A DNA stretch of 64,000 nucleotides from Laetmonice hystrix (GCA_965235115.1 OZ249445.1:2604001-2668000); one strand, 5' to 3'; shown: positions 10,280 through 57,633, numbered from the stretch's first letter. Notes: a model not told the origin generated them from the sequence alone. Numbers and translations: made by a program.

Positions 10280-11084
10280 TTACCTCCTGATGACACAGCA
10301 CCCCCTCCCTACCCCACCCCTCATGGAACCCCTGCCGCCAGATGTCGCTCCGTGAACTCTGCCCGAACACTGGGCTCATTAAAACCTCTCCCACTGCGAC
10401 GGTATCCGCCCGATAGAAAAACACAAAACAACCCGCTACATCGTGTTAGAAATTATTGATACAAAACGGTTTTCAAACATATTCATATTTCAGGATCAGG
10501 ACAACCACTGACAATAATTCAGACAGCAATATTCACGATAATACAGACAGCCATATTCTCCCTTATTCTCAGAAAAATTATTCTTCGAAAATTTAAACCA
10601 CAAGGCTGAACTGTCTTTGAGAAAAACGCTTGAACTATCTAGTCCCCACAGTTAGAACCCGATTGAAATACTAGAACTAGATCTACTTCTTCCAATACAA
10701 AGACCGCTAGGCACATTTGAAACCCCTCAGAGCGCAAGTATGCAAGTATGCTTTCACTCTCATCTTAGTAAATTTGGATTTCACCTTACACCCTGACTCA
10801 GATTCCAATCCTTTCAAGAATGGCTTGCTATAAGATGAGAGTGAAAGCTGTAATTGTTGCCAGCTGCTATACGCCCAGCTGTCCCCTCCGTTTCCCCCAG
10901 CTGACTGCAATATACCAGGAGCTCTACTCAACCCCTCACTCCATGCTAACCTCCACGAGGGCTGCGTATACACGGAGAAGCTACTGGAGGAGATCTGTCT
11001 ACAACTATGGGTACACCGCCAGGTGTTACGACCCCATCCCTTCCCCCTCCCTGATCACATCTGGTCTCACTGACATAGACCCAG

Positions 11085-11241: not shown

Positions 11242-11749
11242 TCCAGTTTTGGTGGTACGCAAGGGACGGGGGGGGGGGGGGTCCGACCCTTCCCCCTTTT
11301 TGAACTACCTCCGGTATTTTTTCTAATAGATTTTCCTTGACTACTGGATCTCTGGTATTCCCCCGATTTGAGGTGAACCAACGTATTTGCCAGCCTTCCC
11401 GGACGGGACCCCCCTATTCAAAATCCTGGCTCGGCCAGGTGAGACTGGAGTCGGCAGACTCTGTCAAGCCCTGTCGCCTAACACCGTCTTCAGCTGAACG
11501 GTCCTCATGCGACAGCGCCTGCTGGCGGGAATTTTGCGAAACCGGAAATTGATGAGGCCTAACCGTGTTAGCAGCTGGCAACCTGTTTGTTATAGGCCTA
11601 CATAACACACATTGATCGCGAAACGTTTGGAGATTCATATTGTGTGACGGTAATTTACTTCTTTATATACGATATATATGTTTCTATCCCTCATTGTAGA
11701 TATTTGAAGTGCCATAGAAAAGCTTGATCGGGACGGTCCGTCATATGCT

Positions 11750-44857: not shown

Positions 44858-45818
44858 TGCATTACACAGTTAGCATAATATAAGCATCTGCATTACACAG
44901 TAAAAACAATAACAAAAGAAAATATTAAAATCACATATTTTTATTGACATATTCATCCAAGAAATGGAATGATTCCACACAGGAGCAGCTTCTGACAAGC
45001 GTCCATGTGAGAAGGCACAATTCTTTAAAAGTGAATGATTTCACCCCGTTTAAGTGAAACGAAAGGGAAAAACTACAGGAATGTAGCAGTTTCTAACGGA
45101 TTTTTCATGTTGTATACAAAATTGTAACTATATACATAAAAGTTCCATAAAAATGACACTACAAAGACTACATTACTACAAGATACAACTGAAGACTGAA
45201 AGAACACAAATGTTGTTTCTGATTCGTCTTGTTACAATGTATTTAAAATCAACTGTTACAATTTGTTTAAAAATCTGTCCAGTCCTTTGTACACATACAC
45301 ATACTCCATACCATAACTCACTGCACCATGGTTCATCTAGAGTAGGCCCAATGAAAATAGTTTCTGTATACTCATCCCTGGGGCAGCAGCTACCTGCTGA
45401 CCAGAGACTGAGGAGCACTTTGCAGAAGTCTAGAAAATGCTCCCCTGAAAGCTCATACAATGTCTATGGAATGGATGGATAAAAACCAGCTTATTAAATG
45501 TTTGACAGTTCTGTACAGTACCTGTCTTTATGTTCATGTACATAAGCTTTTGTAAAACGTTTTTCTGCCTTCTATCTACAGTATTGTGCATGGTTTTATG
45601 ACATATAATATGCACGTTCTGGCAGAACTGAACCTGTTAATTTCTCTGGCTACACCATATGGAAAAATAAACACCTTTCCGTGAACATTGTTCTCATACA
45701 TATTCTGCCATAAAGTAAAATTCAAAGTTCAAAGCACTGTCTCTGAATATTGGTAACGCCAGCAAGTTTATAATGGTCCTGATAAATGGGCAAGCTGTCA
45801 ACATACGGCTGACGGCTC

Positions 45819-45872
45819 TCACTGGTTGGGCATCTTTCTGATCAGGCAGATTGACCCGATAATTCCAGATAC
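45819..45872 (-). CDS. TspB terminal coding exon
   Basis: ctgctttcag|VSGIIGSICLIRKMPNQ*; aligns with TspA ISGMAFAIILY. Confidence 0.85.
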   Translation of the reverse strand, partial: VSGIIGSICLIRKMPNQ

Positions 45873-48800
45873 CTGAAAGCAGAAAATAATGGGTGAAATG
45901 AGGTGAATCCATTTGTATTACAAGTCATGACAACAGAGTGATGCAAGTACCTGCGGAAAGTTTTCCTTTAACTGTCTGTATTGAGAGGGCATGAAGCTGG
46001 TCGTTGTTACATGTATTCTCCTCTAGTATTCTCAAGGTTAGTGTAACAGACAAACACTTACCATTAGGATCATTAAGGTGAAGCCAAAACCCACAATGAG
46101 TGAAGAATTTTCAATGACGTAACGCTTCCCTGCATTATAACAACCCTGCAAACATAGCGAGCAGTGTGTTAGAATGGGATCTGATAAACTGCATCAAAGT
46201 AACAGTGACACCTAGCTCTTTGAATCCATGTCATCTGTTAAATATTGTAATAGCTAGTAGCTGACCAGATATTTTTAAAACAGTGCTCTTTACTTTCCTT
46301 TTGGATAATATCATTATAAATAGATGTGAAATCCTCATAAAATGACTTTGTAAGATACATTCCTCATTGACATTCGTTGCCTTTCAGTCACTGTAAAAAT
46401 ATTACGTGCAATCATTAAAATGAACATTGCATACTTACTCCATAGTAAAGCGCCCTGTTGATAGCCCCAGAATCCTGTGCTGGTGGGCCCAGCCGCCACT
46501 TCTGGCAGGTATAGCGGTCAACGTAACGGTAGAAACGATCCCTCACACAACAAGATCGTGGCACGTACGGCCGCTGATCCTCTGATCAACCAAAGGAAAA
46601 ACGATTATGCTCAGGAGCAGTGCTAGCATGCATAAAAGGAGCAAGTGGTAGTAGTAATACTAGTAGTAGTAGTAGTTGTAGTAGTAGCAGTAGTAGAGCA
46701 TATGTATTATTAGTTGTGCATAATGTAGAAGTAGGGGCCTGGTAGTTCTAAATATTAAATATTACAAACATATCATATTTCTGCCTTTGCCAAGTACAGT
46801 ACAAACTCTACTTGTCCTTGTTATAACATGACACAAAAATATACATACATATAGTAATATTGCATTTAATAATTTGAAAATCAAAGGTCTCTGGATAAGT
46901 TACTGTACTTGAACGTATAATAAGCAGATATTCTACTTTTACCCAAGAACCATTTAAACTAAATACTAAAACCTCGTACCTAAAGCTGTGAGGAGCAAAA
47001 GTATGAGAAAGGGACAAAATAAAGTTTTAACTAATTAAACGCTCCAGGCTTTTATAACTCCATTTTTGCAACAAGTTTAGTGGTGATGCAGTGGAGAATT
47101 GGGAGTTCAGTGAAGAACATTTCTCAAATTTGAGATACAAGACAGGTATTGGTGCGAGTCATTCAGTGCCTGGTCATGCCTTCCTCCGTGCCAACTGTTA
47201 GTACAAGGGCAGCCTCATTTTTTAGGCTGGTAGCCATACAGTTTGGACAGTCCATACCTTGTGTGGTTTTTACTTTTCAGTGAATTTTTTTTTAAATGTT
47301 CTTTTCCACCTTAGAGAAAATGTCAGGCACGGAAACGGAGCTGAACCCCAGGTAAAACATTAGATTTTCTCAGATTACACACAAATTTTGAGGCAAACTG
47401 CTGACACAAGGTATGTTCCACGATTCAATTAAACTAATAAAAATGCTAGCACTACAATCTATATTTATTCTGTAAATGAATAATAACATTGAAATGGTTA
47501 GCATGCAAATATATCGACTGTGTTTGTACCAGGCACAAGTATTGATTGAGACAATGCATCCTGAGCGCCGAACTGCTGGAACCATTTTGTTTCTCTGTAG
47601 CTCTTCCAGTCGTTGTCATCAACGCCACAACAGAATAACTGTAAAGAAATTTGGAAAATGATCAACACTTAAAAATTAAACTTAATCTTAGCCTATACTT
47701 CTGAGGTAGCTTCAGCAGTAATCAGGAACCAGTTGTTCAAATTGCTCTAAACTAATTTACAAATCCAGGTGGATATTTCCAATTGGTCAGTTTTCAGATT
47801 TCCTGTTTAACTGTGAACTACCTCAGAAAGTACAAGTAATGCTCTGGTGGGGGCAGCACCTAGAGGACTTTGGCGGCGCTTTGATAACGTTTACCTACCA
47901 GGATTCCAAGGCTGGAGTTCAAACCATCTTGACTCACTATAGATTCTCCAATTGTTGTCGTCAACAGCACAGCACTCAAGCTGAAAGCCTCAATCATTTA
48001 CTAACACCACAAAACAGATTCATTTAAATAACTTATTCTTTACAATTCCGGATGATAGAGGATGATATCAACCTCTACTTTCCAAGATCAGGTTTTATCT
48101 GGCAAATTATAAAAAAAAAAGTTATAGATGGTATCAGCTGACCTGTTCAGGTTGCGAAAAGCGAATTTAGTTTGGATATCAGAAAGATGATTTACCCTTT
48201 CTTGTGCCTTGTCCCACGCATACGTCACTGCACGGTTGTACCGATGGTGTTGATCAACGCCATACCGTTCCTTCAGTGTATCTCGCATTGTTTTTCGAAC
48301 ACCTTCACCAATCTAGAATGAACAATCAAAAGGAAAATCAAAAAACTAAATTTAAACCACACCATGTAGATCTTGGTGAGATATTCAGTAAACTTGAAGA
48401 TCAGATAACGTGAGCCTAAAGCATTTTGTCAATCATACCCTTACATAACACAAAGTCCCTGTCCAAATGAAACATTCAAAAATAGGTATTTAGGAGAAAT
48501 AGCATGAGGTATATGACTGCTGGTCTCCCAAAGAAAGTTCAAAAAAGGTTAAAGCACATTTTCATAAAAAGTATAATGCAGAAACTACTAACAAGTACAC
48601 ACTACTGTTAACTGTTCTTTCTCTCTGATTTTTACACTTCCCTCCTAAAACATATTTCGGCCACATACAATTCCAGCTGAACAGAGAAGTTTTTTTTATA
48701 CCAGTGGCTCAATTCATACTTCAACCCAGTCATGGTACTATAAGTAACAAATCACCACTGTCGCTGCTTTAAATAAGCTCATATAAACCATCTTTTAAAG

Positions 48801-51359
48801 CTTCGTATATGGTAGATGCATTTGTTAATAAAGCACTGATATAATCTCTAAAGCACTCGTAAAAAAAAGCATTATCTATAATATAGCATTAATGACCCAA
48901 AATGAAGCTATGTTATTTTACTCTCCATTCCTCCCCATAAAACTCCAAAGTAATCCTTAATTGCATTGATTAGAAATTTTCATTAGAAATTAGTAGTAGC
49001 ATCACCTGCTTTTTAATATATGCTACCTTGAGGTTACTCCATTTGTCCTCTGATATAGGCTCAAGTCTAAAGGCATGTTGTATTGCCTTGATTTTCTGAT
49101 CCACTACATTATTTTCCTAATATCAAATTCAATACCAAATAGCATAGTAAATACTGAATCAATCAAATAATGATAATAAGACAGAAAAAACTGCCAATTC
49201 TACTATGTGAGCTGTTTCTTTCTTACATGCAATCAATAAAAAGTCAAATGTGTTGATTTATTTTCTCAAATCATAAATGAATGCCACATTAGAACACCAA
49301 CTTCAGATCCTGCAGTACATTTTTAAATACATGTACCCTCAAAATCTCAGTATCAGGTATGTCTTTTGGTTGCCAAAATACATAGATTATAGTATACAAC
49401 ATGTATTATATAATACAATATACCAACTAGTGTCACCTCATACTGAATGCCATAGTTATAATGAAGCTGTAGCATGACCTTGCAGCACTTTTTTGTAGAG
49501 GCAGAACGATTCACCATAGTACATACAGTTGGCACAAAATAATTCACAATATGCAGGTCAAATATCATTGCTTTGTAAATTATAACTCAGAACAAGCTGT
49601 GGAGGGTATTTGGCTGTGTAGACCTCTTTACTTTAACTACCTCTCAAAATTTAATTCTCTCCTGTGCCACCTATCTTTGTGTTTGTGCTATTCTTCCTCA
49701 TACAGGCAGAATATCTGACTAGCTAAGGAATATTTTTCTGAACTGATTAGGGCCTACACCATCCTTTAATTTGGAATAGGATTATGTTGTGAATCATGTT
49801 GTGAATCCAATGTAATTGCATTATGACAATAGTTAGCATATCATTAGAAAATGTATCGTTCCACCCCTGTTTGCCACCTTTCCAAACCCACCCATGGTCA
49901 CCAGGCATGTACTACCCTGCTGCGCTCTGGACAACATTGAACATTCCGACTCAGCAAAACTCACCTTTGCATTTTGCCACTGAATGAAGGATATTGAGTG
50001 AAAGGGTAAGAAGGCAGGACATTGAATCAAGCATTGGGAATCATAGACATTGCAATCAGAAAATAAGAGAAAGGAAAGTTTGTTGCATTGGAAAAAGTAG
50101 AAATCAACCATACTGACAGATACAGTATAGCTTGTAGCGTACATACTCCCTACAAAGGCCTGTGGCAAATGGCAGACTAGCAACATTGTACACTATCAAG
50201 CATAAACGTTACGTTTCAATCTGAAATCTACAGACATGTATATTCAGCACTAACATACTTTATTTTCGGCCAACTACACAAAAAGTAACTTCCTTGAAAG
50301 GGTAATATCTATTACACAGACAGGTAAGCAAGCAGAGGATCGTAAATTTAAACGATGAAATCAGCCAAGAAAGGCACACTTCTGATTCCTTCTAATGGAA
50401 CCTGAAGGTCTACTATATATTCAGTCTAAAAATTTGGCTCTGAAGACAGAAGGCAATTAGACTTTCACAAGTTTACCGATAAATTATACACAATTAACTC
50501 ACCTGTGACCTAAACACAATGGCCAGAATTCCAGAAATGAGGAGGAGGAACATGATGAAACACAATGTTATCAGGTACTGCAACGAGACAAAGAAGAGAA
50601 ATAATCAATACATGTACATGTAATTAATATAGGCATGTGAGGACATACACTTAATTCTACATAGTTATAACCATGAGAGCAGTCAAATCGTCACAGATTA
50701 ACGGGTCTTTTCACAAGCGGCTGTTCCATTCAGATTAACTCTATCAATTTAATAAAATGTTGTCAGAATGTGTCTAGGAGGAGAGAGAGATTCACTTACC
50801 ACCCAGAGAAGGCACTTGTTTTCATTCACAGAACCACAACATCCAAAGAAGGTGATGATCATGATCAGGGCTCCACCCGCAATGAATATATAAGCTGCAA
50901 CCTCGATCAGCATTGAGCCCGAGATTGTTGCAATGAAGTTTCGATCCGCAGCCAGCCATATTCCAATGCCGACTATTATGCATCCAAGCAACTGCCATGA
51001 CAATTTTAAACACTGGTTTACTGCCAAGTACAATTGCTATTACAAAATGAATTTGCAATGAAATTATTTCAGTTGTTTTGAAAAAATTAAGCCTATTTGG
51101 AATATTATGTATTTAAATGTAATAAAAAAAATTGGAAAAATAACTATTCTGAATTTTCCTTCCAGAAATTTTGCATTCATATAAAAATGGTAGAAATCTT
51201 TCCATGAAAGACTTTCATTCTGACTGGATTACTTACAAAAAAGATGAGATTGAAGACAAACATGCAGTATTTAATCCACTGTATTTTGGTCTCCTCAGAA
51301 TCTGTGGGTCTCTGGCGGAAGTTATCCATGCCCGCTCCTTGACCTCCACCACCCTTCAT
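45819..51359 (-). CDS. Tetraspanin B (CD151/TSPAN11-like), 289 aa with exon 5a or 298 aa with exon 5b
   Basis: Coding exons (-): 51237-51359, 50800-50991, 50503-50577, 48196-48312, [47899-47980 or 47530-47638], 46439-46581, 46062-46145, 45819-45872, all GT-AG and in frame. Four TM segments, KYCMFVFNLIFF, FFGCCG, large loop with CC, PRSCC, C and GC cysteines. Subfamily assignment is tentative. Confidence 0.93.
46062..46145 (-). CDS. TspB exon 7 (GCY + TM4 start, 84 nt)
   Basis: GCYNAGKRYVIENSSLIVGFGFTLMILM|gtaagt. Confidence 0.92.
46439..46581 (-). CDS. TspB exon 6 (PxSCC half of the large loop, 143 nt)
   Basis: (E)DQRPYVPRSCCVRDRFYRYVDRYTCQKWRLGPPAQDSGAINRALYYG|gtaagt; starts in phase 1. 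Confidence 0.92.
47530..47638 (-). CDS. TspB exon 5b (CC-motif exon, 'CCG' version, 109 nt)
   Basis: ttctttacag|LFCCGVDDNDWKSYRETKWFQQFGAQDALSQSILVP+G|gtacaa; phase 0 to 1; ends in CCT-G like 5a. The donor is weak. Confidence 0.82.
47697..47831. other. Stem-loop in the TspB 5a-5b intron
   Basis: TTCTGAGGTAG (47699-47709) / CTACCTCAGAA (47818-47828) is a perfect 11-bp core, extended on both sides with bulges, plus inner CAGGAA / TTCCTG. Confidence 0.65.
47899..47980 (-). CDS. TspB exon 5a (CC-motif exon, 'CCA' version, 82 nt)
   Basis: ctttcag|LECCAVDDNNWRIYSESRWFELQPWNP+G|gtaggt; phase 0 to 1. Confidence 0.88.
48196..48312 (-). CDS. TspB exon 4 (large-loop helices, 117 nt)
   Basis: IGEGVRKTMRDTLKERYGVDQHHRYNRAVTYAWDKAQER; homologous to TspA exon 4 and the same length. 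Confidence 0.92.
49965..49979 (-). CDS. TspB candidate 15-nt microexon (WQNAK)
   Basis: ccttcattcag|TGGCAAAATGCAAAG|gtgagt; phase 0-0; about 130 nt upstream with no AG. Confidence 0.6.
50503..50577 (-). CDS. TspB exon 3 (TM3, 75 nt)
   Basis: YLITLCFIMFLLLISGILAIVFRSQ|gtgagt. Confidence 0.93.
50800..50991 (-). CDS. TspB exon 2 (192 nt)
   Basis: LLGCIIVGIGIWLAADRNF...FFGCCGSVNENKCLLWV|gtaagt. Confidence 0.95.
51237..51359 (-). CDS. TspB coding exon 1 (N-tail + TM1)
   Basis: GCCATG start; MKGGGGQGAG...KYCMFVFNLIFF|gtaagt; upstream acceptor at 51381-51382. Confidence 0.92.
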
Positions 51360-52236
51360 GGCCAAACCTTCAGTTGACCTCTGGAAATATAGCAAATAAT
51401 CAACCATAAAAGTTGTACAATTGGCATTCCCACAACTGGATGACTAAAAAGGAGATAATGTGTGGAATGAGTGAGCATTCATCTGTGAAGGCCTTTACCA
51501 GCTCTTACACTATATCATTAGTATACTGTACATTTGAAAAAAATGTATAAAATGTGTGCCCTATAACTAGATTAATATAATCAGACAGATACATTATGAA
51601 CTCCATGGTTAAATTAGTCTGAAAAGCATTTATAGTAGAAAAGTTAAAACTCCGAGCCTGCTATATACTCCTTATAGGGCAAGCTCCTGATGGACACAAC
51701 CATAGTGTAGAGCGGAGTCTGAGGTCAACTTCAAAACTTAATTTTGGGATGGCCCAGCATCCAATACAATTTCGATGAACTCAAATTATTTATCCGAATA
51801 TAATATTCCCTGAGCCTAAATAAGACATACAGTAAGACATCTGAAAAACTGAGCTAACACTGGGCTCCCAAGATGTCCACTGGGAATTCCCTGGTAAAGG
51901 TATTAGTGGGGAAATAACATGGTAAACATGTATTGTAGAAACTAGGTCAACTCAGTGTCATGCAATCTCTAGGTTACCACCTGTCCAAGTTATCTTTTGA
52001 ACATCATTCAGGGTAAAATATGGATTAATGTTTTACTTACATCAACCTGGAACGGTTCCGTCTCATAATAGTTGTAACTAGATGGGCGAGCGCTTCGCCT
52101 CTCAGAAACTCGCAGTTTATCCATCTTAATTTACCGGTCGAGTTCTACCAAACTCCAGTTAACAGTGGTTGCCCACCTGAGTTTCTTATCAGCAAAGTTC
52201 TTATCAAAACCAGGACAGGCTGATAAGGACACTTAC

Positions 52237-55236: not shown

Positions 55237-57633
55237 CTGAAAAAACAAGTAACAAAGCATTTATTCACTGGTCAATCAAGTCCACAAAACAATATGTACT
55301 CCTGATTCGTATACTCGTATAAAATTATATTAATAAAACTTACAAAATATACATATAATATCATTATCCATGTAAGGTCATTATATATTCATTATCCCTT
55401 CTGGTAAGCTCAGTATAGAAAATCACAAAACTCAGCTAATCAGCTCACTCACCAGACAGAGCCCAATACCTATGCCTATCCCTGCCAAGTATCCTGTAAA
55501 TCTCCACGCAAACTCCCTCCCAGCATTGTAGCAACCCTGGAATACGAGAACATACACATACAATATGATATTATATAGACACGTGTTATATATAGACAGG
55601 TGTTGCACTGACGTAATAACCTGCAAACTTAATGTATGTTCCACACAGTATAAATTGTCATTCAGTTTAACTTGGCTGTGCCTGATTATGTTGAGACGCT
55701 CACCCGAGAATGCACTGCCGGGTTGACCTCCCCAGACGGTCTGCCTGGAGGGCCCTGGTTGAACGTCTGGCATTTCTCCTTGTCGATGTATTCACCATAC
55801 GCGTTCAGCAAACAGCATGACGCAGGCACATACGGTTTGGAGTGCTCCACCACACCTGGCTGGATCTTGTACCACTCCGACTCTTTATACACACCCCAAC
55901 CATTGGCTTCCACGCTGCAGCAGTACAGCTAGTGCGGAGGAAAACAGTCCAGCACATAAACACAAGGTGGCTGCTACAAAACTATCATTGTCATACACAT
56001 AGTCATAGCCAAGGTTTTTAAAAAGGAGAATTCTGTATTCAGATTTGCCTGAATAAACACTGGACTCAACAAAACTTTATTATAAAATACATTCGCGCTA
56101 ATATCAGCAAAGATTTCCCAGAAAACAGATCAAGTGTCTTACCTCTACTTGTGCCATGTCCCAAGCCCGTGTGAGAGCCCTATTGTTGCCATTATCTAAA
56201 TTCACACCATACTCTTTCCTCAAAGTGTCAGCCATTTTTCCTCTGATTTCGTCTCCAATCTGCAAAAAGAGGCATTTCAGAAGTTATTAAAAATCTGATA
56301 GTGTAAATGAAATAAACACAGGCAATTACATAATGAACCAGGCCCAGCTTCCTTGCTACTGCAAATGCAGAATTAATCATTTGGTGTAGGAAAACCCCGG
56401 GCCCATTTAAAGAACTCCTTTTTACTAATTGACCACATGGTATACATGTAGTAAAAAGAGCAAGGAGAAAAATACCTGTAGATTTTAAGTTTGTGGCATA
56501 GATTCCCTTTGACCTACAGAAATTGTTTCATTCTGGAGTAAAACTGCTTACCTGAGAGCGAAATACGAGGGCCAGGATACCTCCAAGCAGGAGAATCACA
56601 AAAATGATGAGAACACTTACAAAGTACTGAAACAAAGTGAACACAGTGATCATTTCTTCTTCATAGTCTGCTTCATGTATACATGTATAAAATAAGATTT
56701 TAGTGTCACACTCTTGATCTACAAGTTGTCAGGCAAGTAAGCTACTGTAAATGCATTTGTTAAAAAAAAAGAATTAGGAGATCAATAAAAAATATTATCT
56801 AAATGTCAGAAAAAAGAATTGGTGCTTGAACTATACCGGTAAGTCAAAACATTAGTGTAGCTGCCCACTTAATGTTATATAAATATCAAACACAAATGCT
56901 TCATTTAAGCCTGTTGAAAATGAACTCTGAAAGAAAGACCTGTTTGAAAGCTTTATGTGCTCTTGTGGTACTGAGTGATGGTAAAACAACTTACTATGAG
57001 AATTAAGAGTTTACTCTCTCGTACAGCACCGAGACAACCACAGAAGGAGACGAATATGATGACTGCACTGCCGATGATGATGATATAAATGGCTGCTGTC
57101 ATGATATCTGATTCAAATATGGGGGACATGAAGTTTCTCTCCAGTAGCATCCAGATACACACTCCAACCATAGCACAACCCAGCAGCTGCAAAAATCAAC
57201 ATTCAAAGATATCTTAAAACGCAGACCTTTATGCTAAAAAGTAAAAACCCTGGCAATTGGTAAAACTTAGGTAAAACATTGTGACTGCATCCTTACAATA
57301 TCTTGGTGTATTTTTACTTCAACAAAAGCCAAGGCCATTTACAGAATTTTCTTGAATTATATTAATACATCATAAGTTATATGTGTATAAAACAATAAAA
57401 GAACCCCCCCCCCCCACTCCATTCATAAACAGCCCCTGCTGAACACAATTTGCATGAAAATAAAACCAGCACAAATTTATAAACCCCAATCCGCAATATT
57501 CAAAAAGGCAAGAACAACAGAGGGTACTGAATAAATCCTTAGAAATTATACTTACGAAGAACAGGAGGTTCATGATGAACAGGAGATACTTGGAAAACTG
57601 TCCACATGAGTTGAGGTCTTTTTGGATCCCCAT
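55174..57633 (-). CDS. Tetraspanin A (CD151/TSPAN11-like), 277 aa, tandem paralog of TspB
   Basis: Coding exons (-): 57556-57633, 56995-57186, 56552-56626, 56143-56259, 55704-55928, 55453-55536, 55174-55236, all phase 0, GT-AG. Exon sizes 192/75/117/225/84 match TspB. Large-loop cysteines CC, PASCC, C, GC. AATAAA at 55057-55062 (-). Confidence 0.95.
55453..55536 (-). CDS. TspA exon 6
   Basis: GCYNAGREFAWRFTGYLAGIGIGIGLCL|gtgagt. Confidence 0.93.
55704..55928 (-). CDS. TspA exon 5 (entire variable large-loop region, 225 nt)
   Basis: LYCCSVEANGW...PYVPASCC...KCQTFNQGPPG...VHSR|gtgagc. Confidence 0.94.
56143..56259 (-). CDS. TspA exon 4
   Basis: IGDEIRGKMADTLRKEYGVNLDNGNNRALTRAWDMAQVE|gtaaga. 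Confidence 0.93.
56552..56626 (-). CDS. TspA exon 3
   Basis: YFVSVLIIFVILLLGGILALVFRSQ|gtaagc. Confidence 0.93.
56995..57186 (-). CDS. TspA exon 2
   Basis: LLGCAMVGVCIWMLLERNF...FCGCLGAVRESKLLILI|gtaagt. Confidence 0.95.
57556..57633 (-). CDS. TspA coding exon 1
   Basis: MGIQKDLNSCGQFSKYLLFIMNLLFF|gtaagt; the exon extends 5' as UTR to an acceptor at 57807-57808. Confidence 0.92.

What the first reader, a model, noticed from the sequence alone, without database searches (positions are those of the whole stretch)
47530..47980. Tetraspanin with a switchable extracellular loop: mutually exclusive duplicated CC-motif exons
Seen: two homologous exons in tandem, 5a LECCAVDDNNWRIYSESRWFELQPWNP and 5b LFCCGVDDNDWKSYRETKWFQQFGAQDALSQSILVP (12/20 identical over the N-terminal part). 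Both enter in phase 0 and leave in phase 1 after CCT-G, so each joins exon 4 to exon 6 in frame. Including both, or skipping both, shifts the frame. Established: this region forms the disulfide-stabilised variable subdomain of the large extracellular loop, which determines tetraspanin partner binding. Inference: one gene makes two tetraspanins with different partner-binding faces, toggling a non-canonical CCA against the canonical CCG motif and adding 9 residues. I do not know of a described case, but cannot search.
Basis: partly seen in the sequence, partly recalled or inferred. Interest (0 to 1): 0.92.

Follow-up and report, generated by a model that had tools for sequence, protein, structure and literature searches.

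The report
Tetraspanin with two alternative loop exons
A tetraspanin membrane-protein gene carries two tandem, related versions of one exon for its outer loop; related worms make mRNAs with either version but never both, although the only RNA data for this species show just the second version in use.

Summary
On the minus strand, exon 5a (47980-47899, 82 nt) and exon 5b (47638-47530, 109 nt) are homologous. Both have AG/GT sites, enter in phase 0 and leave in phase 1. Only one-or-the-other inclusion keeps the frame, giving 294 or 303 aa.

RNA evidence in this species covers one form only. Run X4 proved to be RNA. Its contigs join exon 4 directly to 5b, and 5b to exon 6. Exon 5a appears only in a low-depth unspliced contig.

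Comparative evidence shows the pair is an old, working mutually exclusive pair.
- Capitella teleta has the same short-then-long exon pair, with the same phases, in the syntenic gene next to PRMT. Its short exon is unannotated.
- Two marine metatranscriptomes each hold two transcripts that are 100% nucleotide-identical over 726 and 707 nt on either side. They differ only by an 82-nt versus a 109-nt exon.
- Short-type transcripts are scattered across the orthologue tree.
- Synonymous sites are saturated while pN is 0.19-0.36.

The CCA/CCG toggle is not the conserved difference. The tail is: Q[V/P]W[N/T]P versus [F/Y]G[A/S] plus about 10-12 residues. No described tetraspanin case was found in the literature searched. 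The effect on partner binding is inferred, not tested. I class it as a new member of a known kind, of moderate interest.

The parts
51237..51387 (-). Exon 1: 5' UTR plus the start of the CDS. The provisional ATG is at 51359-51357. The exon's upstream limit is not determined.
   Evidence: RNA contig record 27 of X4 covers 51237-51387 and is joined to exon 2. ORF built.
50800..50991 (-). Exon 2 (TM1, small loop, TM2).
   Evidence: RNA contig joints 50991>51237 and 50577>50800. Pfam PF00335 Tetraspanin, E 7e-11.
50503..50577 (-). Exon 3 (TM3).
   Evidence: RNA contig joints.
49965..49979 (-). 15-nt microexon encoding WQNAK, included in the assembled mRNA.
   Evidence: There are 13 letters between joint sides 48314 and 50503 in X4 record 27, plus 2 ambiguous letters. 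Together they equal the reverse complement of TGGCAAAATGCAAAG. Located with AG/GT flanks.
48196..48312 (-). Exon 4 (large-loop helices A and B). It ends in phase 0.
47899..47980 (-). Exon 5a, the short type: 82 nt, 27 codons plus 1. It is the alternative exon and was not seen spliced in this species' RNA run.
   Evidence: It is 17/27 identical to the Capitella short exon (peptides) and 65.5% over 29 aa by tblastx. In X4 it appears only in unspliced contig 47743-48024 at depth 18. Its polypyrimidine tract is weak, 0.45.
47639..47898 (-). 260-nt intron between 5a and 5b. It is too long for steric exclusion and contains a stem-loop at about 47697-47831.
   Evidence: Fold z-score -3.4. There is no counterpart in the 264-nt Capitella intron, z +0.4.
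47530..47638 (-). Exon 5b, the long type: 109 nt, 36 codons plus 1. It is the form used in the available RNA.
   Evidence: X4 contig record 27 (depth 124) joins 48196>47638. The loose end AGGCACAAGT at 46582 is the reverse complement of the 3' end of 5b..
46439..46581 (-). Exon 6 (EDQRPYVPRSCC...). It enters in phase 1 and is shared by both forms.
46062..46145 (-). Exon 7 (GCYNAG..., start of TM4).
   Evidence: joints 46144>46438 and 45869>46059.
45450..45872 (-). Exon 8: the end of the CDS (stop TGA at 45821-45819) and the 3' UTR. The UTR continues beyond 45450.
   Evidence: X4 record 25 (1093 nt, depth 413) is.

Best explanation
This is a tetraspanin gene, the positional orthologue of Capitella teleta CAPTEDRAFT_21307, lying tail to tail with PRMT1. 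The exon that starts at the CC motif of the large extracellular loop exists as two tandem homologous copies, spliced in a mutually exclusive way.

The upstream copy, 5a, is the short and probably ancestral type, ending Q-P-W-N-P. The downstream copy, 5b, is the long type, with an F-G-A motif and nine more residues. Each copy is 3n+1 nt long. Taking both or neither therefore shifts the frame into an early stop, so only single-exon mRNAs encode a full protein. Such faulty mRNAs would presumably be removed by nonsense-mediated decay.

5b has the stronger polypyrimidine tract and is the default form. It is the one seen in this species' RNA. 5a has a weak acceptor in both this species and Capitella and is probably included only in some tissue or stage.

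The swap changes the first part of the disulfide-braced variable subdomain of the loop. By analogy with other tetraspanins, that would alter which partner proteins are bound.

What is shown:
- the exon anatomy and the frame logic;
- use of 5b here;
- use of both types from one gene in a relative;
- conservation, synteny and purifying selection.

What is inferred:
- use of 5a in this species;
- removal of faulty mRNAs by NMD;
- regulated choice between the exons;
- an effect on partner binding.
For: - Anatomy and frames.
- RNA in this species: X4 contig record 27 joins exons 1, 2, 3, the microexon, 4 and 5b. The loose end at exon 6 matches 5b.
- A relative makes both forms. P0206 (332 aa, long) and P0207 (323 aa, short) are identical outside exon 5. 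Their transcripts L006/L008 and L007/L009 occur together in two JGI samples. They are 100% nucleotide-identical for 726-728 nt before and 697-707 nt after a swapped segment of 109 versus 82 nt.
- The Capitella genome has exon 4, then a short exon at 10904-10985 (82 nt, unannotated), a 264-nt intron, a long exon at 11250-11349, then exon 6. Phases and order are the same. The whole Tsp-PRMT region is colinear with the window.
- Tree of 47 proteins with exon 5 removed: short-type transcripts sit in at least 5 separate places next to long-type ones, and well-supported branches force 6 changes (flank identities).
- Selection: pN is 0.19-0.36 against pS 0.70-1.0, within and between species. Window 5a is 17/27 identical to Capitella 5a, while the rest of the protein is about 53% identical.
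- Tetraspanin identity: Pfam PF00335; AF2 models with four TM helices; best PDB matches are UPK1B, UPK1A, Tspan15, CD53, CD9 and CD81.
- Acceptor strength: polypyrimidine content 0.45 for 5a against 0.68-0.73 for 5b, in both species.
Against: - No 5a junction (48196>47980 or 47899>46581) appears in the single RNA run available for this species. There 5a is only part of an unspliced contig at depth 18, against 124-413 for the exons.
- That run is one sample of unknown tissue, kept as contigs, and contigs drop rare variants. Absence is therefore weak evidence, but use of 5a here is unproven.
- No experiment or model here tests partner binding.
- The AF2 models give only moderate confidence (pLDDT about 50-80) in the swapped segment.
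- The source species of the metatranscriptome isoforms is unknown.
Confidence: 0.8

Rival explanations
1. In this particular species 5a is an intact but no longer used relic. The gene now makes only the 5b protein, and the ancestral switch has been lost at the level of regulation.
For: Only 5b junctions appear in X4, and 5a is seen only unspliced at low depth. 5a has the weakest acceptor tract in the gene, 0.45.
Against: The 5a reading frame, AG acceptor and GTAGGT donor are intact. 5a is more similar to the Capitella short exon (17/27, 63%) than the rest of the protein is to Capitella's (about 53%). pN is 0.29-0.34 against saturated pS. The weak acceptor is shared with Capitella, so it looks like a regulatory feature rather than decay. 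One RNA sample kept as contigs cannot show absence.
Confidence: 0.13
2. The short and long forms seen in relatives come from two recently duplicated genes, or from chimeric metatranscriptome assembly, and not from alternative splicing of one gene.
For: The transcripts come from assembled environmental metatranscriptomes of unknown species.
Against: The flanks are 100% identical at nucleotide level over about 1.4 kb, UTRs included, while the swapped segments differ at most synonymous sites. The same pair was assembled independently in two samples. The differing segments are exactly one exon each, 82 and 109 nt, the same sizes as in the window. Both the Capitella genome and this window show the two exons in tandem inside one gene.
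Confidence: 0.03
3. The two exons are a chance resemblance, or independent recent duplications in each lineage, with no shared function.
For: Within a species the N-terminal 21 residues of the two exons can be more alike than the same type is between species. Capitella is 17/21 (peptides).
Against: The type-specific tails (Q[V/P]W[N/T]P versus [F/Y]G[A/S]...) are shared across species. Order and phases are the same in Capitella. Synonymous sites between 5a and 5b within species are saturated, pS 0.74-1.0, so the duplication is old and there has been no recent conversion.
Confidence: 0.02

Closest known systems
Mutually exclusive exons that arose by tandem exon duplication. The general class is known from, for example, Dscam, 14-3-3 zeta, tropomyosin and ion-channel genes (named from my own knowledge).
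   Same: There are two adjacent homologous exons of similar length with the same phases. One and only one appears in each mature mRNA. The length of 3n+1 makes double inclusion or double skipping out of frame.
   Different: The host gene family is the tetraspanins. The 260-nt intron rules out steric exclusion. I found no conserved docking/selector RNA pairing: the stem-loop in the window's intron has no counterpart in Capitella.
Alternative splicing of human tetraspanins (Hochheimer et al. 2019, PMC6773723).
   Same: Alternative splicing diversifies the products of tetraspanin genes.
   Different: [quoted passage not shown] The term 'mutually exclusive' does not occur in its text. Here both products are complete four-TM tetraspanins that differ only in part of the variable subdomain.
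Capitella teleta tetraspanin CAPTEDRAFT_21307 (P0154).
   Same: It is the positional orthologue: about 53% identical, next to PRMT in the same orientation, and with the same short and long exon pair.
   Different: The database record annotates only the long-exon protein, and the short exon at L005 10904-10985 is unannotated. Both Capitella exons carry CCA.
Solved tetraspanins: uroplakins UPK1B/UPK1A (8jj5), Tspan15 (8esv), CD53 (6wvg), CD9 (6k4j), CD81 (5tcx, 7jic).
   Same: The fold is the same: four TM helices and a helical large-loop stalk with a disulfide-braced variable head. In CD81 and Tspan15 the variable head is the partner-binding surface (from my own knowledge).
   Different: Sequence identity is only 13-23%. 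None of these is known to swap this segment by mutually exclusive exons. The nearest automatic names for non-annelid relatives are 'CD151 antigen-like', at about 30% identity.

Membership tests
Tetraspanin (Pfam PF00335) | Significant match to the family profile. | tested here: met
   The exon 2 piece alone scores 42.6 bits, E 7e-11, above the cutoff of 32.1. All orthologues carry precomputed PF00335. A profile of the orthologues hits CD53, CD81, CD9, Tspan7, Tspan15 and UPK1B at E 1e-27 to 1e-15.
Tetraspanin (Pfam PF00335) | Four transmembrane helices with a small and a large extracellular loop. | tested here: met
   AF2 models of the relative's two isoforms have long helices at 52-96, 99-128, 131-161 and 278/287-317/326. 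The top Foldseek PDB hits are all tetraspanins. This was tested on orthologues P0206 and P0207, not on the window protein itself.
Tetraspanin (Pfam PF00335) | CCG motif and further conserved cysteines (PxSC) in the large loop. | tested here: met
   CC is followed by G in 5b and by A in 5a. PRSCC, a later C and GC follow, giving 6 loop cysteines. C203, C204, C247, C248, C262 and C287 are invariant in the 37-sequence alignment. The third residue of the motif varies (A, G or S) in this orthogroup.
Mutually exclusive exon pair | Adjacent homologous exons with identical entry and exit phases and intact splice sites. | tested here: met
Mutually exclusive exon pair | Mature mRNAs each contain exactly one of the two exons, from one gene. 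| tested here: met
   Met in a relative: L006/L008 and L007/L009 have identical flanks and an 82- versus 109-nt swap. In this species it is met only for 5b.
Mutually exclusive exon pair | Both exons are used in THIS species. | tested here: inconclusive
   Exon 4>5b and 5b>6 are seen. No 5a junction appears in the one RNA run, which is kept as contigs from a single sample.
Mutually exclusive exon pair | A mechanism that enforces exclusivity. | tested here: inconclusive
   Frame incompatibility of double inclusion or double skipping is shown. NMD itself is not testable here. Steric hindrance is excluded by the 260-nt intron. No conserved competing RNA structure was found. All splice sites are GT-AG of ordinary type.

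The most novel reading that the evidence does not exclude
This is an ancient switch, at least as old as the common ancestor of this species and Capitella, in the partner-binding head of a tetraspanin. One gene makes two full-length tetraspanins. The short ancestral form is made in a restricted tissue or stage and the long 'FGA' form by default, and the two bind different partners. It would be the first mutually exclusive exon switch described in the tetraspanin large loop, and a natural domain-swap experiment.
Probability: 0.55. Interest if true: 0.65.

Novelty: new member of a known kind. Interest (0 to 1): 0.55.

Why it matters
Tetraspanins organise membrane partners largely through the variable head of the large loop. 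Specificity is usually studied by making chimeras between paralogues. Here evolution has kept, over a long time, two interchangeable versions of exactly that segment within one gene. That points to two distinct and selectable functions for an otherwise identical protein.

The finding gives a clean handle for asking what the segment after the CC motif contributes to partner choice. It shows that the 'CCG' glycine is dispensable in this orthogroup. It also corrects an annotation: the Capitella record lacks the short exon.

The mechanism, mutually exclusive exons from tandem duplication, is well known. The advance is therefore a new and well-supported instance, not a new principle.

Tried and rejected
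- RNA runs. Two searches, with a 2-kb genomic stretch and with the last exon plus 3' UTR, listed no run on record as RNA. Laying the four listed runs showed that X4 is RNA.
- Competing RNA structure as the exclusivity mechanism. The stem-loop in the 5a-5b intron folds better than shuffles (z -3.4). The equivalent Capitella intron does not (z +0.4), so it is not a conserved part of the switch.
- CCA/CCG as the functional toggle. Rejected: both exon types are mostly CCA across species.
- Rbfox-type UGCAUG. One copy lies 24 nt downstream of the 5b donor (47506). There is none at the equivalent place in Capitella, so I drew no conclusion.
- An older origin outside annelids. A profile search found only annelid-like orthologues (Capitella; Ridgeia for the paralogue clade), then relatives at about 30% identity. 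The Priapulus 'CD151-like' isoforms X1 and X2 differ in overall length (350 versus 275 aa), which does not fit a swap of one exon.
- Searching with the window's own spliced protein. Not done, because it has no reference and would have had to be typed. Orthologue P0023, and then an alignment, were used instead.
- The Schistosoma japonicum splicing paper mentions tetraspanins only in its reference list, not as a mutually exclusive exon case.
- A regex count of the [FY]G motif was off by one position and returned 0. The motif is plain in the printed list, and I did not use that count.

Full report
**1. What is in the sequence**

The finding lies in a minus-strand, intron-rich eukaryotic gene. Read on the minus strand:
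- Exon 4 (48312-48196) ends ...YAWDKAQER in phase 0, before GTAAAT.
- Exon 5a (47980-47899, 82 nt) follows an AG and encodes LECCAVDDNNWRIYSESRWFELQPWNP plus one G, before GTAGGT.
- After a 260-nt intron, exon 5b (47638-47530, 109 nt) follows an AG. It encodes LFCCGVDDNDWKSYRETKWFQQFGAQDALSQSILVP plus one G, before GTACAA.
- Exon 6 starts at 46581, where (G)AG GAT reads EDQRPYVPRSCC....

A six-frame search of the whole 627-Mb genome with 5b returns 5a as the best hit after 5b itself (E 0.002).

Splicing the exons in silico gives 294 aa with 5a and 303 aa with 5b. With both or with neither, the frame shifts into an early stop.

**2. The gene**

The exon 2 piece matches Pfam Tetraspanin (E 7e-11). 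The full model is eight coding exons plus a 15-nt microexon (see the parts list). The protein has four predicted TM segments and six cysteines in the large loop. Exon 5 begins exactly at the CC motif. It therefore encodes the first part of the variable, disulfide-braced head.

Two other family members exist in this genome. One lies 4 kb upstream in the window (57.2-55.4 kb, minus strand) and one at 19.57 Mb on the same chromosome. Both have a single short-type exon fused to exon 6 (...WY.[I/A]QPGV...P[YL]VP.SCC).

**3. RNA in this species**

Neither run search listed a run on record as RNA. When the four listed runs were laid on 45450-51440, X1-X3 behaved as DNA, with contiguous cover of the introns. 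X4 (59 M letters) carries spliced contigs.
- Record 27 (683 nt, depth 124) joins exon 1, exon 2, exon 3, 13 extra letters, exon 4 and exon 5b. The joint 47638>48196 skips 557 nt, which include 5a, and has GT..AG ends.
- At the 5' edge of exon 6, two contigs carry the loose letters AGGCACAAGT. Their reverse complement, ACTTGTGCCT, is the end of 5b. The end of 5a would read TTGGAATCCT.
- 5a is covered only by record 28 (47743-48024, depth 18), which runs unspliced through both of its splice sites. Other purely intronic contigs have depths of 4-11.

So 5b is the form used in this sample, and no 5a junction was retained. These are contigs of one sample of unknown tissue, and contigs drop rare variants. 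This shows that 5b is present and dominant. It does not show that 5a is absent.

**4. Relatives**

A search of 1.84 billion representatives with the exon 2 piece gave P0023 (read). This full-length orthologue has a 5a-like loop: LDCCAVDD...NPWTP, then EDQKPYVP.

Searching with P0023, and later with a 37-sequence profile, gave about 45 orthologues. Nearly all are transcript-derived (Logan or JGI). The named ones are Capitella teleta and, in the paralogue clade, Ridgeia piscesae. The orthogroup therefore looks annelid.

Aligned at exon 5, the orthologues fall into two classes:
- a short class of exactly 27 residues ending Q[V/P]W[N/T]P;
- a long class of 32-37 residues with [F/Y]G[A/S] at positions 23-25 and a variable acidic tail.

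The third residue of the 'CCG' motif does not separate the classes. The short class has 6 A, 2 G and 1 S. The long class has 35 A and 14 G.

**5. One gene, two mRNAs, shown in a relative**

P0206 (332 aa, long) and P0207 (323 aa, short) are identical outside exon 5. Their transcripts were each assembled in two JGI samples, 3300018747 and 3300018969.

At nucleotide level L006 and L008 are 100% identical for 726 nt upstream and 707 nt downstream, UTRs included. They differ only in a 109-nt versus an 82-nt segment. L007 and L009 behave the same way. These are exactly the exon sizes in the window. This is direct evidence for mutually exclusive use.

**6. The same arrangement in a second genome, with synteny**

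The Capitella gene for P0154 lies next to a PRMT gene on the opposite strand. Its genomic sequence shows:
- exon 4, ending AQER before GTGAGT;
- an unannotated exon at L005 10904-10985 (82 nt, LECCAVETNGWDVYQESKWIEDQVWNP plus G, flanked by cag and gtatca);
- a 264-nt intron;
- the annotated long exon at 11250-11349 (100 nt);
- exon 6.

tblastx shows the whole region is colinear with the window. This covers the tetraspanin exons including 5a (65.5% over 29 aa) and 5b, then PRMT. The window gene is therefore the positional orthologue, and the pair predates the split of the two lineages.

**7. Exon type is not a gene lineage**

In a maximum-likelihood tree of 47 proteins with exon 5 cut out, short-type transcripts sit beside long-type ones in at least five places. 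Examples are P0023 with P0151, and P0156 with P0168 and P0202, the latter pair having 92.7% identical flanks. Well-supported branches force six changes of the label.

A separate, well-supported outgroup clade is short-type only (Ridgeia P0215, P0188, P0211). Together with the short-type fused exons of the two paralogues in this genome, this suggests that the short form is ancestral. The long form would then have arisen by tandem duplication plus extension. This order of events is an inference.

**8. Selection**

By the Nei-Gojobori method, synonymous sites are saturated. pS is 0.74-1.0 between 5a and 5b within species, and 0.70-1.0 between species for each type. pN is 0.19-0.36. There is thus no recent gene conversion, and both copies have been under long purifying selection.

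Window 5a is 17/27 identical to Capitella 5a, while the rest of the protein is about 53% identical.

**9. How it most likely works**

Exclusivity:
- Both exons are 3n+1 nt long, so only single inclusion is in frame (shown).
- Removal of the faulty mRNAs by NMD is inferred.
- The 260-nt intron excludes steric hindrance, and all sites are ordinary GT-AG.
- A stem-loop in the intron (z -3.4) has no counterpart in Capitella (z +0.4).

Choice:
- 5a has the weakest polypyrimidine tract of the gene (0.45), and the value is the same in Capitella.
- 5b has 0.68-0.73.
- Long-type transcripts far outnumber short-type ones among the relatives, and 5b is the form in X4.
- I infer that 5b is the default and that 5a needs an activator in some tissue or stage.

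Consequence:
- AF2 models of P0206 and P0207 (pLDDT 75 and 77) give the tetraspanin fold. The best solved matches are UPK1B, UPK1A, Tspan15, CD53, CD9 and CD81.
- The swapped segment follows stalk helix B and forms short helices of moderate confidence.
- The long form has an extra short helix (227-230), followed by a low-confidence stretch (231-236).
- That this changes partner binding follows from what is known of CD81 and Tspan15, from my own knowledge. It is untested here.

**10. Comparison with what is known**

Mutually exclusive exons from tandem exon duplication are a well-known class. I ran six full-text searches combining tetraspanin with terms for mutually exclusive splicing, exon duplication and large-loop isoforms. 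None found a described case (one search checked one candidate).

[quoted passage not shown] It does not use the term 'mutually exclusive'. The Capitella record annotates only the long form.

I therefore class this as a new member of a known kind. The library does not cover subscription journals, so an earlier description cannot be excluded.

**11. Verdict**

That logic is now backed by direct transcript evidence in a relative and by conservation in a second genome.

It needs three corrections:
- In this species only 5b use is shown.
- The CCA/CCG difference is incidental, and the tail is the conserved difference.
- The functional claim remains an inference.

Interest is moderate (0.55).

Noticed in passing
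window 49965-49979 (minus strand): A 15-nt microexon encoding WQNAK, with AG/GT flanks, is included in the assembled mRNA of run X4 between exons 3 and 4. None of the orthologue proteins I looked at shows an insertion at that point (FR.Q | IG..). It may therefore be lineage-specific or alternative.
   Followed up: partly
In tblastx each Capitella copy matches both window copies. That pair is therefore old as well.
   Followed up: partly
window 55400-57200 (minus strand); G000 C11:19566820-19567038: There are two paralogous tetraspanins, one in tandem 4 kb upstream of the studied gene. In both, a short-type exon 5 is fused to exon 6 with no intron, and there is no second copy of the exon.
   Followed up: partly
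window 47697-47831 (minus strand): A stem of about 20 bp closes a loop of about 100 nt in the intron between 5a and 5b. It folds better than shuffles (z -3.4). The 264-nt Capitella intron has no such fold.
   Followed up: partly
window 47501-47507 (minus strand): UGCAUGC lies 24 nt downstream of the 5b donor, and another copy lies at 46631 in the 5b-6 intron. There is no equivalent in Capitella.
   Followed up: no
window 46641-46700: A CTA/CTG-type trinucleotide microsatellite sits in the intron just upstream of exon 6. The read-laying tool skipped it as a repeat.
   Followed up: no
run X4: X4 is listed with kind '?' and no library on record, but it is RNA: it holds spliced contigs with GT..AG joints. 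X1-X3, from the same sample, cover the introns contiguously. They differ from the window at roughly 1 site in 100, which suggests a heterozygous or different haplotype.
   Followed up: partly
L005 10904-10985 (Capitella teleta KB305005.1): The short alternative exon is not part of the annotated Capitella protein CAPTEDRAFT_21307. This is an annotation gap in the public record.
   Followed up: yes
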